Shown: positions 11,338 to 31,915, numbered from the stretch's first letter. The stretch is DNA of 37,664 bases from Octopus bimaculoides (GCF_001194135.2 NC_068993.1:1663643-1701306); one strand, 5' to 3'. Notes: generated from the sequence alone by a model not told the origin. Numbers and translations: made by a program.

Positions 11338-11450
11338 ATAACTGGAAACTGATTCTGTTTATTGTACTTCCGGTGTGTTTGGCTGTTGTGGCGTTTATTG
11401 TGGTCGCCATTTTGGTGCGGTGTCTTCGAAGACGGAAAGCGGCAAAGCAG
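11338..11450 (+). CDS. Exon encoding the transmembrane helix and stop-transfer segment: (D)NWKLILFIVLPVCLAVVAFIVVAILVRCLRRRKAAKQ
   Basis: Acceptor tttctgttatgtttcag| at 11337. 23-residue hydrophobic run LILFIVLPVCLAVVAFIVVAILV followed by RCLRRRK (positive-inside rule, type I topology). Donor CAG|gtcaac at 11451 (phase 0) matches the next exon. Confidence 0.88.
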
Positions 11451-11467
11451 GTCAACAAATTTTTGTT

Positions 11468-11850
11468 GTATGTATGTATGTATGTATGTATGTATGTATG
11501 TATGTATGTATGTATGTATGTATGTATGTATGTGTGCGTGTATATACCTGTGTATGTATGTATGCGTGTATGTGCATGTGTATGTATGTATGAGTGTATA
11601 TAGGTATGTATGTATGTATGTGTTTGTGTGTGCGTGCGTGTGTGTGTGTGTATGTATGAATGTATGTATGTACGCATATCTATATGCATGCTTGTATGTA
11701 TGCAAGCACGTATGACTATAGTGTGAGTATGTGTGTGTATCTATGTTTATGTATGTGTGTGTGTGAATATGTGTGTATACATGTATACATGATTGTATGT
11801 ATGTATGTATGCATGCATGTATGTATGTATGTATGCATGCTTGCATGCAA
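11468..11850. repeat. (TATG)n array with degenerate TG/TATG extension, 17 nt downstream of the TM-exon donor
   Basis: Direct reading; perfect part about 11468-11532. Confidence 0.95.
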
Positions 11851-12205
11851 AAATGATTAATTACTAAGATTAATTAAACGGGGCTAATAACTGTTTTATA
11901 GTATATTTTATAGCAATAAAATACCGTATCTTAAAGGTTTGCGAAACATTCGGTGATTACTTTCACGTGTGGCATAAATTATACTGTCTGACAAGGGTCC
12001 TCTGTCTATTGAGACTAATTAAACTGATTTAATTATCGTTTTCTGGTATATTTTATTAACATAAAAGGTAATGTTGTAGTATATGTATGTATTGAACATT
12101 ACTTCCGTTTTGTGCCGGAAGTTAAGTACCTTTACACGTACATATTCGAGTACTCAAGAATATTGACACACACGCGCGCACACACACACGCATGTATGCA
12201 TATGT

Positions 12206-12206
12206 A

Positions 12207-12291
<85 letters not shown>
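12206..12291. repeat. (ATCT)n-(GTCT)n compound microsatellite
   Basis: Direct reading. Confidence 0.95.
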
Positions 12292-12293
<2 letters not shown>

Positions 12294-12944
12294 GGTTAGG
12301 AAGCAAACTCCTTACTACACAGCCACGCTTGCGCCTATATATTCAATTAGTTCTAACATCTAGAGTTGTTATAACCTCTACGTGTTGTAACTACCATGCA
12401 ATTATCTACGTAGATAGCCACTATGTGTCATAACCACCATACAGCCACCTATATAAACAACTCGAACTATATCTAATTAGTTCTTCGACCACCTTAGGTT
12501 ATCTTAGCCACTAACTACAACAGAGCGTTCCTCCGAAATCTGAGGTGTTTCCATCTTCTCACCGTCTATCTTTGTCGGTAATTTTATCATTGATTGCCCT
12601 TTCCATGTTTTGTATTCAATCTTATGTTTATATAAGTGAATCTAGTTGTTAAATATAGAGAGAAGAAGCAGCCAGGCCTCATCAACAGATCCAAAAAAGC
12701 ATATCTAACGATGTCTGAATGAATAAACATAACATTTTTACAAATACAGTAATGTCAGACATATTGCCAAATGATTAACTGTTCAAAACTGTTTCAGGCC
12801 ACCTGATAAGGTATCTACTGTGTGCTTGCTTGTGAATGCATGTGTATCTATGCATCTATGTATACATACATACACATACACAAACAAACATACATACATA
12901 TATATATGTGTGTTTGTGTGTGTGTGTGTATATATATCTATTTA

Positions 12945-12998
12945 TATCTATCTATCTATCTATCTATATATCTATCTATCTATCTATCTATCTATTTA

Positions 12999-13079
<81 letters not shown>

Positions 13080-13090
13080 GCCTGTCTGTC
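12945..13090. repeat. (ATCT)n-(GTCT)n compound microsatellite running into a gap
   Basis: Direct reading. Confidence 0.95.
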
Positions 13091-14356
13091 NNNNNNNNNN
13101 NNNNNNNNNNNNNNNNNNNNNNNNNNNNNNNNNNNNNNNNNNNNNNNNNNNNNNNNNNNNNNNNNNNNNNNNNNNNNNNNNNNNNNNNNNNNNNNNNNNN
13201 NNNNNNNNNNNNNNNNNNNNNNNNNNNNNNNNNNNNNNNNNNNNNNNNNNNNNNNNNNNNNNNNNNNNNNNNNNNNNNNNNNNNNNNNNNNNNNNNNNNN
13301 NNNNNNNNNNNNNNNNNNNNNNNNNNNNNNNNNNNNNNNNNNNNNNNNNNNNNNNNNNNNNNNNNNNNNNNNNNNNNNNNNNNNNNNNNNNNNNNNNNNN
13401 NNNNNNNNNNNNNNNNNNNNNNNNNNNNNNNNNNNNNNNNNNNNNNNNNNNNNNNNNNNNNNNNNNNNNNNNNNNNNNNNNNNNNNNNNNNNNNNNNNNN
13501 NNNNNNNNNNNNNNNNNNNNNNNNNNNNNNNNNNNNTATATATATATATATGTACATATATATGCATATATATGTATATATATTACTGTTCTGTTAAAGT
13601 GGGATCAATGAAAACAAATAAGTACTCCATCCTGCGAGAGATAAATATCATTTAATGTACACAATATGTGTACAGACATCGTTTGCTTAGAACACGAGGA
13701 TTGTTTGGAGACACAAGGCGTGTTATAAAAACCTGCCTAGACACGTGTCTTGACAGTAAGAAACTATTAGTAGCTCATATATATACTCTGAGAAAGAGGT
13801 AAGTGAAAGAGGGAGAGACAGAAAGAGGTAATGAATTAAAAGGAAGAAGATATAAAGTAAAAAAATAAAGAAAGAAGGCGAAGTAAAACAGCGGTAAATC
13901 TGTGCTGAAGCAGATTGAACGCGAAAGAATTGTGCTAGAATGGTTTCTGTATAAGAACAGATATCTAATACTTGGAGAAACTATTTAACTTAATAGTAGA
14001 CAACAATGAACAAGGCAAAGATAAAGATGGTGGCCGCTTGTTTTATATAATGACTGCGCTGTTGATTAGAGTTACAAGGAAACTGGCGTGTGGAATTTAC
14101 AAGCGCTAAAAATATATTTTATTCATTATAGGCCTTCTTTTATGCTTCGTAGTTTGGTTTTCTTTTTTCTTTTTTCTTTCCCCCTCTTTCTGAGTTTGGC
14201 TGTGTAATGTTAAGATTGTCAGGGAAATATGTAAATAGCTGACCGAATAAAAATAGCTTTAATGTGTGTGGGGTAACAATGTAGAGCTGTGTTGTCAGTC
14301 ATTTCGTTCTCTGGTCGTAATTATGTCTGAAATAGGTTTCGCTTGACCATTCACTA

Positions 14357-14391
<35 letters not shown>

Positions 14392-29776: not shown

Positions 29777-29842
<66 letters not shown>

Positions 29843-29955
29843 GAAATACACTCACACACACATATGTATATGCATATATATGTTTATATATATACATATA
29901 TATATGTATATATGTAAATATTTGTTTTTATACATACACACACACACGTGTGTCT

Positions 29956-30008
<53 letters not shown>

Positions 30009-30127
30009 GGGAGTGTGTAATAATTATGTTGATGAGAGAGTATCATCAACGATTGCTAACGAGTTGTTGTTCGGTCAGAATAAGAAAGAAAAGATAAAAA
30101 AAAATAAAACAGAAAGAGGAAAAAAAC

Positions 30128-30180
<53 letters not shown>

Positions 30181-30190
30181 NNNNNNNNNN

Positions 30191-30235
<45 letters not shown>
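29750..30235. repeat. (TA)n, (GT)n and (GA)n microsatellite cluster
   Basis: Direct reading; the (GA)n contains a 10-N gap at 30181-30190. Confidence 0.95.
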
Positions 30236-30241
<6 letters not shown>

Positions 30242-30910
30242 GGGAGAGCGACAAAGTTATTGAATGAAGGTGTCATTAAATATTGACTGGACGAACAGGT
30301 TAACGGAGCAGAGCATCTGGAATGACTGGTTGGTTGGTTGGTTGGTGTAGTAGTAGTAGTAGTGGTGGTGGTGGTGGTTTTAATAGTAGTAGTAGTAGTA
30401 GTTTTTGTTGTGTAGGCCATTAGCAGCATGGACGATAAAACACTGCCACCCACAAGCGACCACACCGTTATACATACAAGCACACACACGTACACACACA
30501 CACAGACACACACCTACACCTACACCCACACAAACACACACACACTCACACACGCACCCATACAATTACTCCCCGCTCCTTCTCCACTCCTCACCTGACT
30601 CATTGCCCTGTCATGTTGTACTAAAAACAGTTTCTGTTTAACCAACGGAACGAATCTCTGTCTGTGAATGTTAAAGAATTTCCAAAGAGGAAATTCTTGC
30701 TTTCCATTGCAATCTTTTCGTTAAAATATTTCCCAACTTCGATGTACGACGAAACTTGTTGACACTTCCTAGTATACGATAGCATCTGCTTTTGTCTTTG
30801 ACTTCATTCAGTTATTGAACCGCAGCCATGCATAAAACACCTATAAGACAAGGTAATAGATTTTCTGACCCAAATTTTACCCCAATTGATGATGTTTGTA
30901 TTTTTAATGT

Positions 30911-30998
<88 letters not shown>
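30911..30998. repeat. (TAT)n microsatellite immediately upstream of the terminal-exon acceptor
   Basis: Direct reading. Confidence 0.95.
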
Positions 30999-31004
<6 letters not shown>

Positions 31005-31024
31005 TTTCTAATTATTATTTGTAG

Positions 31025-31915
31025 CTTACAGACACGATTTCTCTACCTCGATCTCGAACTTCGACAGCCGGCAGTTCCTCGGTTGGTGAAGCTGAACATA
31101 TACGTTTCCAACAGCGGTCGCCATCGATTCTACTGGATATTCCTGGAAGACTTCAGAATGGATACGCAGATCAAAGACTGTCTGTTGGTTCATTGTCGCA
31201 GAACCAACGAGACAATAATAATAATGCTCAGCGTCGATTAAGCTCTCGTCGTGTGGAACCGCCATCTTTGTTGCTTCAAATTCCAATCCAAGGTAGGACA
31301 ACACCATTGCTACGACCAACGCGACCCGCACCGCCTCCGCCACCCAGTCGCAAGCCAATACGGAGTGTTAGTCCCTCCTCCACAGCCACCTCCCCGTTAA
31401 CTGAGACAACCCCTATAACACCGTTAACCCCAACGTTACTACAGACACCAGCTGAAGAAGCTGACGTCATTGTGACGACATTAACATTACCACCAACAAT
31501 ACCAGCGACCACTCAATTAGCAACAACCGAAGGAGTAGCAGCAGCAGCAGCAGCAGCAGCAACAGCACCAGCTGCAGCAACAACAAATCCAGTAATAATT
31601 GGAATTGATGGAAAAGAAGACGCGACAAGAACAACAGCGATACCACCACCACCACCACCGTTATCTTCCCTGGAGCCAAACCTAGAATCGAACCCAGATA
31701 ATCAATTAGAATTGACAAATCATTTATCGACACCTTTAATTCAATCTCAAGAAAATGTTCAAATGCAATCAAAAATTGTTAACGATGTAGCGCCATCTGG
31801 GTCACTAGAAAATGGCATCGAACCCCTAACGGAACCACTTCTTCAAGCAGAAACACAATGTCTACCGCTGTCACACTATCCGAATCAACTGCAGACAGAT
31901 TCTTGTGAAACATAA
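31025..31915 (+). CDS. Terminal coding exon: 296-aa intrinsically disordered Ser/Thr/Pro-rich tail ending ...QLQTDSCET*
   Basis: Acceptor ttttctaattattatttgtag|. 891-nt open frame that extends the 31193-31915 ORF upstream to an in-frame TAG lying inside the acceptor. Higher GC than the flanks. Contains RPAPPPPPSR, poly-Ala and poly-Pro. Alternative acceptor at 31031/31032. Confidence 0.85.
   Translation, partial: LTDTISLPRSRTSTAGSSSVGEAEHIRFQQRSPSILLDIPGRLQNGYADQRLSVGSLSQNQRDNNNNAQRRLSSRRVEPPSLLLQIPIQGRTTPLLRPTRPAPPPPPSRKPIRSVSPSSTATSPLTETTPITPLTPTLLQTPAEEADVIVTTLTLPPTIPATTQLATTEGVAAAAAAAATAPAAATTNPVIIGIDGKEDATRTTAIPPPPPPLSSLEPNLESNPDNQLELTNHLSTPLIQSQENVQMQSKIVNDVAPSGSLENGIEPLTEPLLQAETQCLPLSHYPNQLQTDSCET

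What the first reader, a model, noticed from the sequence alone, without database searches (positions are those of the whole stretch)
11338..31915. Single-pass membrane receptor with its own cytoplasmic SH3 domain
Seen: the hand-spliced gene reads TM helix, RRRK, PDLWIHH, SH3, charged linker, then a 296-aa Pro/Ser/Thr tail, with consistent phases over four introns of 2.7-7.1 kb. Known: membrane-anchored SH3 proteins are rare. Yeast Sho1 and Pex13 are multi-pass, and the TANGO1/MIA SH3-like domain is luminal. Animal Ig/FN3 guidance receptors recruit SH3 adaptors in trans (DCC with Nck1, Dscam and Robo with Dock). Inference: this may be a receptor-adaptor fusion, a lineage-specific neural or adhesion receptor that carries its adaptor module in cis. 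I cannot tell whether it is already described, and the ectodomain is not visible here.
Basis: partly seen in the sequence, partly recalled or inferred. Interest (0 to 1): 0.88.

Follow-up and report, generated by a model that had tools for sequence, protein, structure and literature searches.

The report
Octopus membrane-anchored SH3 scaffold gene
The hand-spliced gene is real and already in RefSeq as an uncharacterised Octopus bimaculoides protein; it is a cut-down member of an old, unstudied animal family of single-pass membrane proteins with a mucin-like outside and SH3 docking domains inside, so it looks like a membrane-anchored scaffold and not an Ig/FN3-type receptor.

Summary
Observation confirmed. 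The five exons (11338-11450, 15439-15553, 20901-21080, 28151-28317, 31025-31915, + strand) have AG/GT borders and one open frame. All N gaps lie in introns. The product equals residues 5-491 of RefSeq XP_052828262.1 (Octopus bimaculoides LOC106868072 isoform X1).

- **SH3 exon:** a 180-nt in-frame cassette, skipped in isoform X2, in an O. sinensis isoform and in a cephalopod mRNA contig.
- **Conservation:** the TM and SH3 exons are the best conserved parts (87-88% identity to Argonauta).
- **Family:** it is not lineage-specific. All molluscs sampled have homologues with a Ser/Thr-rich, Cys-free N-terminus, one TM, basic stop-transfer, DLW motif, SH3, VSSFxxKK motif, two more SH3s, PxxP motifs and usually a C-terminal SH3. 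An annelid, a hemichordate and a sponge protein share the architecture and colinear motifs. None has an Ig, FN3 or other ectodomain module.
- **Cephalopod version:** it keeps only SH3#1 and one PxxP motif.
- **Ectodomain:** the RefSeq model leaves 7 residues outside the membrane.
- **Literature:** none found on the locus or family.

Best reading: a membrane-anchored SH3/PxxP scaffold, closest in layout to yeast Fus1. It is not a guidance receptor. Moderate interest.

The parts
11338..11450 (+). Exon encoding the TM helix (11349-11417), the near-invariant juxtamembrane Cys and the basic stop-transfer RCLRRRK (11418-11438). It starts in phase 1 (the first two bases complete a codon) and ends in phase 0.
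   Evidence: It is 87% identical to Argonauta, and similarity ends at the acceptor. The mRNA contig L002 joins it to exon 2. AF2 predicts a helix with pLDDT 90-97.
15439..15553 (+). Juxtamembrane exon with the mollusc-wide DLW motif (PDLWIHH at 15454-15474).
   Evidence: It is 97% identical to O. sinensis and 68% to Argonauta. L48 is invariant and W49 nearly invariant in alignment A1.
20901..21080 (+). SH3 cassette exon: 180 nt, phase 1 to 1, encoding the whole SH3 domain (core 20915-21073).
   Evidence: Pfam SH3_2 E=2e-10. CD2AP/CIN85 are the closest solved SH3s. pLDDT is 93-96. It is skipped in XP_052828263.1, in O. sinensis X2 and in P0014. It is 100% identical to O. sinensis and 88% to Argonauta. 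It is the only SH3-coding segment in the window.
28151..28317 (+). Acidic linker exon with the conserved PRVSSFMIKKR motif (28216-28248).
   Evidence: F166 is invariant and S165 nearly invariant in A1. AF2 predicts it as disordered.
31025..31915 (+). Terminal coding exon: a 296-aa Pro/Ser/Thr-rich tail with the family-conserved class-I PxxP motif RPTRPAPPPPPSRKP (31313-31357), a second poly-Pro run (31640-31663) and the stop codon TAA (31913-31915).
   Evidence: It is 61% identical to Argonauta with many indels.
32260..32265 (+). First AATAAA after the stop codon; a candidate polyadenylation signal, not verified.
   Evidence: pattern only.
7228..7450 (+). First exon used by the superseded RefSeq model XP_014768674.1 (MVYVDKHNRRK...DSAS). 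It is highly charged, has no homologue and was dropped in the current annotation, so it is probably not part of the gene.

Best explanation
**What it is.** The locus is Octopus bimaculoides LOC106868072. It is the cephalopod member of an uncharacterised animal family of single-pass membrane proteins.

**Topology.** The N-terminus faces outward. The helix has a strongly basic cytoplasmic flank (RCLRRRK), so the positive-inside rule applies.

**Full-length family layout.** A disordered Ser/Thr-rich, Cys-free, presumably O-glycosylated exterior. Inside the cell, an array of three SH3 domains, several PxxP motifs, a fourth C-terminal SH3 and often a PDZ-ligand-like end.

**Cephalopod version.** It is reduced to the TM helix, the DLW motif, SH3#1, the VSSFMIKK motif and a long disordered tail. 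The tail keeps the conserved class-I SH3 ligand RPTRPAPPPP.

**Most likely mechanism.** It is a membrane-anchored scaffold, not a ligand-binding receptor.
- The helix fixes an SH3 domain and SH3-binding motifs at the inner face of the plasma membrane. The near-invariant juxtamembrane Cys may add a palmitate.
- The SH3 is closest to those of CD2AP/CIN85.
- Together they would gather proline-motif and SH3-containing partners, typically actin or endocytic machinery.
- They may also bind each other, within one molecule or between molecules.

**Tuning by isoforms.** SH3 valency is set by skipping the 180-nt SH3 cassette exon. In O. sinensis an alternative first exon may give a TM-less form.

**Shown:** gene structure, domain content, family membership, isoform models and conservation pattern.

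**Inferred:** topology, palmitoylation, glycosylation, partners and cellular role.
For: **Gene structure.** The structure is identical to RefSeq X1.

**TM exon joined to exon 2.** This is supported by the Argonauta model. It is also supported by a contiguous 633-aa ORF on a 3.7-kb assembly of SRA run SRR9970008, which can only be spliced mRNA.

**SH3 cassette skipping.** It is seen in three sources: XP_052828263.1, O. sinensis X2 and P0014.

**Family.** About 20 mollusc proteins align from the TM through the SH3. L48, W116, G119, G126-W-F-P129 and F166 are invariant, and C31 is nearly invariant.

**TM and SH3s on one mRNA in relatives.** Argopecten P0158/P0160 are 1649-aa products on 6.4-7.4-kb Logan contigs in the 90% cluster of P0012. 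P0087 carries its TM and an SH3 in one 1434-aa product on a 5.3-kb contig.

**Colinear motifs beyond molluscs.** RKAPxPP, PxRFxKPKLxKxP, PPPRPxPP and the C-terminal SH3 are shared with Owenia, Ptychodera and Oscarella. Among 124 other multi-SH3 hits they occur only in three truncated family members.

**No other domain.** Only SH3 domains are detected by Pfam in any member.

**SH3 type.** Canonical, closest to CD2AP/CIN85 (E=5e-9).

**Structure model.** AF2 is confident for the TM helix and the SH3 fold, with disordered motif-bearing linkers.

**Constraint.** The TM and SH3 exons are the most conserved parts of the gene.
Against: - No experiment or expression data was available. Function is inferred from architecture only.
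- No single octopus transcript was seen that carries both the TM and the SH3 exon. The TM+SH3 combination in cephalopods rests on two gene models (O. bimaculoides X1 and Argonauta).
- The O. sinensis models contain the SH3 but not the TM exon.
- The SH3 departs from consensus (ALYDY becomes VLQSY; WW becomes WC), so ligand binding could be weakened or atypical.
- The exon-1 donor is weak (CAG|gtcaac).
- 20% of the 29.5-kb upstream intron is unread, so an ectodomain exon may be missing from the model.
- Orthology with the non-mollusc proteins rests on architecture plus short linear motifs. Pairwise BLAST of the linkers is weak, E 0.1-6 at a deliberately large search space.
Confidence: 0.7

Rival explanations
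1. One reading: a receptor-adaptor fusion. A true ligand-binding adhesion or guidance receptor whose folded ectodomain lies upstream of the window and which carries its SH3 adaptor in cis.
For: The ectodomain is not visible in the window. The gene extends 29.5 kb upstream with many gaps. Argonauta and P0014 do have 86-117 residues before the TM.
Against: - RefSeq X1 has 7 extracellular residues.
- The cephalopod N-terminal parts are short, low-complexity and almost Cys-free.
- In every long homologue the ectodomain is Ser/Thr-rich and nearly Cys-free, and has no Pfam domain.
- tblastn with the known cephalopod ectodomains finds no exon in 70 kb.
Confidence: 0.07
2. TM and SH3 are alternative modules that do not co-occur in octopus mRNAs. 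TM-anchored isoforms skip the SH3 exon, and SH3-containing isoforms start from an internal promoter and are soluble. The TM-SH3 protein would then be a model artefact in cephalopods.
For: The only transcript-level cephalopod sequence (P0014) has the TM without the SH3. Both O. sinensis models have no TM, one with and one without the SH3.
Against: - RefSeq X1 and the Argonauta model join both.
- Exon phases are compatible.
- In other molluscs TM and SH3 domains lie in one contiguous ORF on transcript-sized contigs.
- Both exons are equally well conserved.
- The O. sinensis first exon is not found in the O. bimaculoides locus.
Confidence: 0.15
3. A surface stress or mechanosensor in the manner of fungal Msb2/Hkr1-Sho1 or Wsc/Mid2. 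The glycosylated mucin-like stalk would sense mechanical or osmotic load or contact, and the SH3 array would transmit it to a kinase or actin pathway. This is a more specific version of the scaffold reading, not exclusive of it.
For: The long family members have 160-1350-aa Ser/Thr-rich ectodomains. NCBI's automatic names ('cell wall integrity and stress response component 2-like', 'mucin-17') reflect the same resemblance. Sho1 and Fus1 link membrane sensing to SH3 scaffolding.
Against: The resemblance is compositional only, and no sequence homology to the fungal proteins was tested or found. The octopus protein has little or no ectodomain in the current model, so sensing through a stalk is least plausible for this member.
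Confidence: 0.15

Closest known systems
Unnamed mollusc/metazoan 'mucin-like TM + multi-SH3' proteins, e.g. XP_067664002.1 Haliotis asinina, XP_069130487.1 Argopecten irradians, XP_071125571.1 Mytilus edulis, XP_012940158.1 Aplysia, XP_061189006.1 Saccostrea. NCBI names them automatically as 'serine-rich adhesin for platelets-like', 'mucin-17', 'mucin-2-like', 'dynamin-binding protein' or 'intersectin-1'.
   Same: Single TM with PVC-type helix, Cys plus basic stop-transfer, DLW motif, SH3#1, (V/I)SSF(L/M)xKK motif and RPxRPAPxPP motif, in the same order. Identity over the core is 23-37%.
   Different: The octopus gene lacks SH3#2, SH3#3, the RKAPxPP and PxRFxKPKL motifs, the C-terminal SH3 and the PDZ-ligand-like end. 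Its ectodomain is short or absent, and its SH3 is an alternatively spliced cassette.
Saccharomyces cerevisiae Fus1p
   Same: Single-pass, O-glycosylated membrane protein with a cytosolic tail that combines one SH3 domain with a proline-rich region and acts as a cortical scaffold (PMC2063912).
   Different: Fungal. No sequence relationship was tested or expected beyond the SH3 fold. In Fus1p the SH3 sits near the C-terminus. In the octopus protein it lies about 50 residues after the membrane.
CD2AP / CIN85 (SH3KBP1)
   Same: The closest solved SH3 domains by sequence (E=5e-9). Like the long family members, they have three N-terminal SH3 domains followed by a Pro-rich region, and they scaffold actin and endocytic machinery under membrane receptors.
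   Different: They are soluble, with no TM, and end in a coiled coil. They are recruited to receptor tails in trans. Nothing beyond generic SH3 similarity supports orthology.
Transmembrane adaptor proteins (LAT, PAG/Cbp, NTAL, LIME)
   Same: Very short exterior, one TM, juxtamembrane Cys, and a long disordered cytoplasmic tail of docking motifs. This is an analogy based on established knowledge, not tested here.
   Different: Those use phosphotyrosine motifs and carry no folded domain. There is no homology.
Sho1, Pex13, TANGO1/MIA
   Same: Membrane proteins with an SH3 or SH3-like domain.
   Different: Sho1 has four TM helices (PMC4411306). Pex13 is a peroxisomal multi-pass protein. The TANGO1/MIA SH3-like domain is luminal. 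This protein has one TM and a cytoplasmic canonical SH3.

Membership tests
SH3 domain (Pfam PF00018 / PF07653 / PF14604) | Profile match above the curated gathering score | tested here: met
   SH3_2 40.6 bits (cut-off 21.8), SH3_1 35.3 (22.9), SH3_9 33.4 (30).
SH3 domain (Pfam PF00018 / PF07653 / PF14604) | Five-stranded beta-barrel fold | tested here: met
   AF2 predicts strands 82-86, 105-111, 116-121, 124-129 and 133-138 with pLDDT 93-96.
SH3 domain (Pfam PF00018 / PF07653 / PF14604) | Canonical ligand-binding residues (ALYDY tyrosines, WW, P..Y) | tested here: inconclusive
   The motifs read VLQSY, GWC and FPGSY. The first Trp, the Pro and the Tyr are kept. The first ALYDY Tyr and the second Trp are replaced. 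Binding was not assayed.
Mollusc/metazoan mucin-like TM multi-SH3 family (unnamed) | Single TM followed by a Cys plus basic stop-transfer | tested here: met
   (C31 nearly invariant).
Mollusc/metazoan mucin-like TM multi-SH3 family (unnamed) | DLW motif about 40 residues after the start of the TM, then SH3#1, then the (V/I)(S/T)SF motif | tested here: met
   DLW is at aa 48 and VSSFMI at aa 164 of P0002. They are colinear in all molluscs, though in Saccostrea the third motif reads PVSSFMS and missed the regular expression.
Mollusc/metazoan mucin-like TM multi-SH3 family (unnamed) | RPxRPAPxPP class-I PxxP motif in the tail | tested here: met
   RPTRPAPPPP is at aa 292 of P0002, and the same motif occurs in 9 other molluscs.
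Mollusc/metazoan mucin-like TM multi-SH3 family (unnamed) | Ser/Thr-rich, Cys-free N-terminal ectodomain of 160 aa or more | tested here: not met
   RefSeq X1 has 7 residues before the TM. The Argonauta and P0014 orthologues have 86 and 117. No such exon was found in 70 kb, although 20% of the upstream intron is N.
Mollusc/metazoan mucin-like TM multi-SH3 family (unnamed) | SH3#2, SH3#3 and the C-terminal SH3#4 | tested here: not met
   The window holds only one SH3-coding segment. None of the three cephalopod proteins has the others. I therefore treat it as a reduced derivative of the family and not a typical member.
Ig/FN3 guidance or adhesion receptors (DCC, Robo, Dscam type) | Ig and/or FN3 modules in the ectodomain | tested here: not met
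   No Ig or FN3 Pfam hit in this protein or in any of 13 relatives scanned.
Fus1-like (fungal single-pass TM + SH3) | Single-pass TM, glycosylated Ser/Thr-rich exterior, cytosolic SH3 plus Pro-rich region | tested here: inconclusive
   The architecture matches. Glycosylation and homology were not tested. I treat it as an analogue, not a family member.
Sho1 family | Four TM helices before the SH3 | tested here: not met
   There is exactly one hydrophobic segment and no other window scoring above KD 1.8.
TMEM154 (PF15102) | Profile match above the gathering score | tested here: not met
   16.5 bits against a cut-off of 30.3, covering only the TM segment.
CD2AP/CIN85 | Soluble protein with three N-terminal SH3 domains, a Pro-rich region and a C-terminal coiled coil | tested here: not met
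   This protein has a TM helix, one SH3 and no predicted C-terminal coiled coil. Similarity is limited to the SH3.

The most novel reading that the evidence does not exclude
The octopus gene is the reduced cephalopod representative of a single, ancient and never characterised animal gene family. The family spans sponge, annelid, molluscs and hemichordate. Each member joins a mucin-like exterior, through one TM helix, to a fixed array of four SH3 domains and conserved PxxP/basic motifs. That would make it an animal counterpart of the fungal Fus1 or Msb2-Sho1 logic, with receptor tail and CD2AP/Nck-type adaptor fused in cis. It appears to be missing from vertebrates and from the standard ecdysozoan models, which would explain why it has been overlooked.
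Probability: 0.45. Interest if true: 0.6.

Novelty: new variant of a known kind. Interest (0 to 1): 0.45.

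Why it matters
SH3 adaptors are normally soluble and are brought to receptor tails in trans. A conserved animal family that hard-wires an SH3 array to the membrane behind a mucin-like exterior would be a distinct way of coupling the cell surface to actin or endocytic machinery.

The family is absent from the usual model organisms, so it has no literature. The cephalopod version has one SH3 that is switched in or out by a single cassette exon, plus a retained SH3 ligand in the same chain. 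That makes it a compact natural system for asking what membrane-tethered SH3 valency does.

For the scan itself, the value is mainly corrective. The gene is real and already annotated. It is not lineage-specific, and nothing supports an Ig/FN3-type receptor.

Tried and rejected
1. **Word-indexed protein search.** It returned only one O. sinensis isoform and one unrelated ENA fragment. It missed even the sequences used as query, so I did not rely on it and left the third search unused. The exhaustive HMMER search supplied the family.

2. **Ectodomain exons upstream.** tblastn with the Argonauta and P0014 N-termini against the window and the 70-kb locus found nothing. The single 'PPQYVT' match at window 1249 lies in a SINE-like repeat flanked by stops.

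3. **The 'MFQ' coincidence.** ATGTTTCAG sits immediately upstream of the 11338 acceptor and looked like the RefSeq start. It is in the wrong frame. The real start is ATGTTCCAAG|GT, 29.5 kb upstream.

4. **O. sinensis alternative first exon (MAGGITLIAG...).** It was not found in the window or in L001.

5. **Old RefSeq first exon (7228-7450).** No homologue and no Pfam hit, and it was dropped by the current annotation.

6. **Pairwise BLAST of the disordered linkers between phyla.** It gave only weak E-values, so I relied on motif colinearity and specificity instead.

7. **TMEM154 and Psg1 Pfam hits.** They are sub-threshold TM-segment matches.

8. **Other ORFs in the window (8809-9377, 35771-36942).** No Pfam hit, and they look like degraded repeats. 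No tRNA genes were found.

9. **Literature searches** for the locus ids and for TM-SH3 proteins in animals found nothing relevant.

Full report

Yes. Joining 11338-11450, 15439-15553, 20901-21080, 28151-28317 and 31025-31915 on the + strand gives 1466 nt with one open frame. That frame encodes 487 residues and ends at TAA 31913-31915. Every exon is bordered by AG and GT.

The program's warning about gaps was tested first. All six N runs in the span lie inside introns, and none touches an exon or splice site. Exon continuity and frame are therefore unaffected. The gaps could still hide small extra exons.

The described elements are present:
- TM helix at 11349-11417
- RCLRRRK at 11418-11438
- PDLWIHH at 15454-15474
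- SH3 core at 20915-21073

The SH3 passes three Pfam gathering scores. AlphaFold2 folds it with pLDDT 93-96, and predicts the TM segment as a helix with pLDDT 90-97.

The TM exon is not a chance product of T-rich DNA:
- A hydrophobic 21-mer followed by four or more K/R occurs at two places in all six frames of the window. The other sits in microsatellite-like sequence.
- Its GC content (0.47) matches that of exons 2, 3 and 5 and not its flanks (0.33).
- It is 87% identical to the Argonauta orthologue, with similarity ending exactly at the 11338 acceptor.

Its donor (CAG|gtcaac) is weak, but it is the only one that keeps the frame.

**2. What is it?**

An exhaustive HMMER search of 1.84 billion representatives returned a 491-aa protein that is 100% identical over the query. 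That protein is RefSeq XP_052828262.1, 'uncharacterized protein LOC106868072 isoform X1 [Octopus bimaculoides]'. The window is therefore O. bimaculoides, and the hand-spliced chain is already an annotated model.

The genomic record (L001, CM046613.1:1635489-1705557) places the window at L001 28155-65818. X1 has one more coding exon, 10 nt of CDS (ATGTTCCAAG|GTAGGT), 29.5 kb upstream of the TM exon and outside the window. That model leaves only MFQDNWK outside the membrane.

Other isoform models and orthologues:
- Isoform X2 (XP_052828263.1, 431 aa) is identical except that it lacks the 60 residues of the SH3 exon.
- O. sinensis LOC115218265 has X1 with the SH3 and X2 without it. Both start from a different first exon (MAGGITLIAG...) with no TM.
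- Argonauta hians GAB1601648.1 (partial, 735 aa) has 86 residues, then the TM, the SH3 and the tail.
- A 633-aa ORF lies uninterrupted on a 3.7-kb assembly of SRA run SRR9970008 (P0014, L002). It must be spliced mRNA. It joins the TM exon to exon 2 and exon 2 to exon 4, skipping the SH3.

Three conclusions follow:
- The TM exon belongs to this gene.
- The SH3 exon (180 nt, phase 1-1) is a conserved alternatively spliced cassette.
- The one thing not directly shown is a single octopus mRNA molecule carrying both exons.

Conservation supports function for both exons. TM 87% and SH3 88% identity to Argonauta, and the SH3 is 100% identical to O. sinensis. The tail is 61% identical with 166 gapped columns.

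**3. The family.**

Many hits align from the TM helix right through the SH3. They come from gastropods (Haliotis, Gigantopelta, Batillaria, Patella, Aplysia, Lymnaea, Elysia, Plakobranchus, Nucella, Babylonia, Pomacea) and bivalves (Sinanodonta, Argopecten, Mytilus, Dreissena, Saccostrea). NCBI's automatic names are inconsistent and plainly compositional or best-hit labels: 'serine-rich adhesin for platelets-like', 'mucin-17', 'mucin-2-like', 'dynamin-binding protein', 'intersectin-1' and 'cell wall integrity and stress response component 2-like'.

Their common plan:
- No obvious signal peptide, judged by eye
- An N-terminal region of 160-1350 aa with 28-43% Ser+Thr and 0-3 Cys (0 in most)
- Exactly one TM helix (often ..PVC..)
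- A nearly invariant Cys and a basic cluster
- A DLW motif about 40 residues after the TM start
- SH3#1
- A (V/I)(S/T)SF(L/M)x(K/R)(K/R) motif
- SH3#2 (DRNGWM...) and SH3#3 (LDNGWWLG...)
- The motifs RKAPxPP, RPxRPAPxPP, KPxxPxRFxKPKLxKxP and PPPRPxPP
- A long low-complexity stretch
- A C-terminal SH3 (GWCVGMLxDGTTGLY)
- Often an end such as -QSVV, -QTHV, -QTIV or -QTEL that resembles a class-I PDZ ligand

Pfam finds only SH3 domains (three or four) and nothing else.

Transcript-sized contigs carry the long products. P0087 has its TM and an SH3 in one 1434-aa product on a 5.3-kb contig. Argopecten P0158/P0160 are 1649-aa products on 6.4-7.4-kb contigs in the 90% cluster of P0012. So TM and SH3s are co-encoded on one mRNA in the family.

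**4. Beyond molluscs.**

I scanned all 150 listed hits for a strong TM plus SH3. This also picked out proteins from Owenia fusiformis (annelid), Ptychodera flava (hemichordate) and Oscarella pearsei (sponge), one of unknown origin (P0078), and a chytrid fungus.

The three animal proteins share the order TM, three SH3, RKAPxPP, the (K/R)PK(L/F)VK(I/L)P basic motif and PP(P/T)RPxPP. Ptychodera and Oscarella also share the C-terminal SH3, and Ptychodera ends in -TEL.

Among the 124 non-TM multi-SH3 hits (about 105,000 residues), these motifs occur only in three proteins that proved to be truncated mollusc family members. The motifs are therefore specific.

Pairwise BLAST of the linkers alone is weak, as expected for short linear motifs. 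I rate common ancestry across phyla as likely but not proven. DLW and VSSF are mollusc-specific. The chytrid protein has a different, Cys-containing exterior and many tandem SH3s, and I take it to be convergent.

**5. Where the octopus gene sits.**

It has the mollusc-specific DLW and VSSFMIKK motifs, SH3#1 by position, and the RPTRPAPPPP motif. It lacks SH3#2-#4 and the other motifs. tblastn of ten long homologues against the window hits only 20901-21080.

All three cephalopod sequences share this reduced plan, so the loss predates the octopus-Argonauta split. If P0014 comes from another cephalopod lineage, the loss probably predates that divergence too. It is a reduced derivative of the family and not a typical member.

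**6. How it most likely works.**

*Topology (inferred).* The C-terminal flank of the helix carries +6 charge and the N-terminal flank is neutral or acidic, so the positive-inside rule puts the SH3 in the cytoplasm. This fits its canonical, CD2AP/CIN85-like sequence.

*Linkers.* The DLW and VSSF segments are predicted to be disordered. I read them as short linear motifs. VSSF lies in an RxxS context that would suit basophilic kinases, which is speculation.

*Scaffold logic.* The protein holds, at the inner membrane face, one SH3 domain and at least one strong class-I SH3 ligand (RPAPPPP), plus further poly-Pro runs. That fits a membrane-anchored scaffold able to recruit PxxP- and SH3-bearing partners. 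It may also self-associate or auto-inhibit.

*Regulation.* Exon skipping removes the SH3 and changes valency. The conserved juxtamembrane Cys is a candidate palmitoylation site.

*Ectodomain.* With little or no ectodomain, the octopus protein resembles transmembrane adaptor proteins (LAT/PAG type) more than receptors. The long relatives, with mucin-like stalks, could additionally sense or organise the cell surface, in analogy with Fus1, Msb2/Hkr1-Sho1 or podocalyxin-type sialomucins.

None of this has been tested experimentally.

**7. Comparison with known systems.**

The closest described layout is yeast Fus1p. Sho1 has four TM helices (PMC4411306).

CD2AP/CIN85 are the nearest solved SH3s and have a similar 'three SH3 plus Pro-rich' plan, but they are soluble.

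No Ig or FN3 module exists in any relative, so the DCC/Robo/Dscam analogy fails at the ectodomain.

**8. Novelty and verdict.**

The gene is real and already in RefSeq as an uncharacterised protein. Its family is widely annotated but, as far as full-text searches show, never described. I did not survey vertebrate and arthropod proteomes exhaustively. Their absence is inferred only from the top 150 hits.

I classify it as a new variant of a known kind (membrane-anchored SH3 scaffold). The family-level reading (an overlooked ancient animal TM-SH3x4 family) is the most novel one not excluded.

Noticed in passing
window 11329-11337: ATGTTTCAG lies directly before the 11338 acceptor and would spell the same 'MFQ' as the RefSeq X1 N-terminus. 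It is out of frame with the TM exon. The real start codon (ATGTTCCAAG|GT) is 29.5 kb upstream at L001 10001-10010, so this is a coincidence that could mislead manual annotation.
   Followed up: yes
window 7228-7450 (+): An open frame used as the first exon by the superseded model XP_014768674.1. It is Lys/Arg/Glu-rich and has no signal peptide, homologue or Pfam hit. It is probably an ab initio artefact.
   Followed up: partly
window 11451-11870, 12150-12300, 27230-27560, 28000-28120, 29340-30260 and many others: The introns are packed with (TATG)n, (CA)n, (GA)n and similar microsatellites. These create long spurious ORFs (VCMYVCMY..., HTHTHT..., SLSLSL...) on both strands. One abuts the TM-exon donor.
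   Followed up: no
window 1090-1270 and 4830-5160: Copies of a SINE-like repeat (…TTCTACTCTAGGCACAAGNCCCGAAA…GGGGGG…). One gave a chance 6-residue match (PPQYVT) to the Argonauta ectodomain.
   Followed up: partly
window 8809-9377 (+) and 35771-36942 (-): Open frames of 123-264 aa downstream and upstream of the gene that look like degraded retroelement fragments. The first contains a '...IIWKDRVTN...' stretch. No Pfam hit reaches threshold.
   Followed up: partly
O. sinensis LOC115218265 (P0001, P0153); not in the window: Both O. sinensis models start with MAGGITLIAGIESPDLTLRQPPVQRKT spliced to the exon-2 acceptor in place of the TM exon. No counterpart was found in 70 kb of O. bimaculoides. 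It may lie in the 446-N gap at 13091-13536, or be a species-specific alternative promoter giving soluble isoforms.
   Followed up: partly
P0032, P0034, P0133 (mollusc family members): Some gene models of the family begin just after or inside the TM segment (e.g. MSLLCIRRKKKKRVHKSSHEDLWV). TM-less isoforms or truncated models therefore recur across molluscs.
   Followed up: no
P0051 (Ptychodera flava) residues 120-165: The hemichordate SH3#1 also replaces the second Trp of the WW pair with Cys (YGLCRG), as in the octopus GWCRG. This may be a shared or convergent feature of the membrane-proximal SH3.
   Followed up: no
P0149 (Chytriomyces hyalinus): A chytrid fungal protein with a Cys-containing exterior, one TM helix and about ten tandem SH3 domains separated by '...RVSSIY/RQSSLY...' linkers. 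It looks like an independent TM plus multi-SH3 architecture in early-diverging fungi.
   Followed up: no
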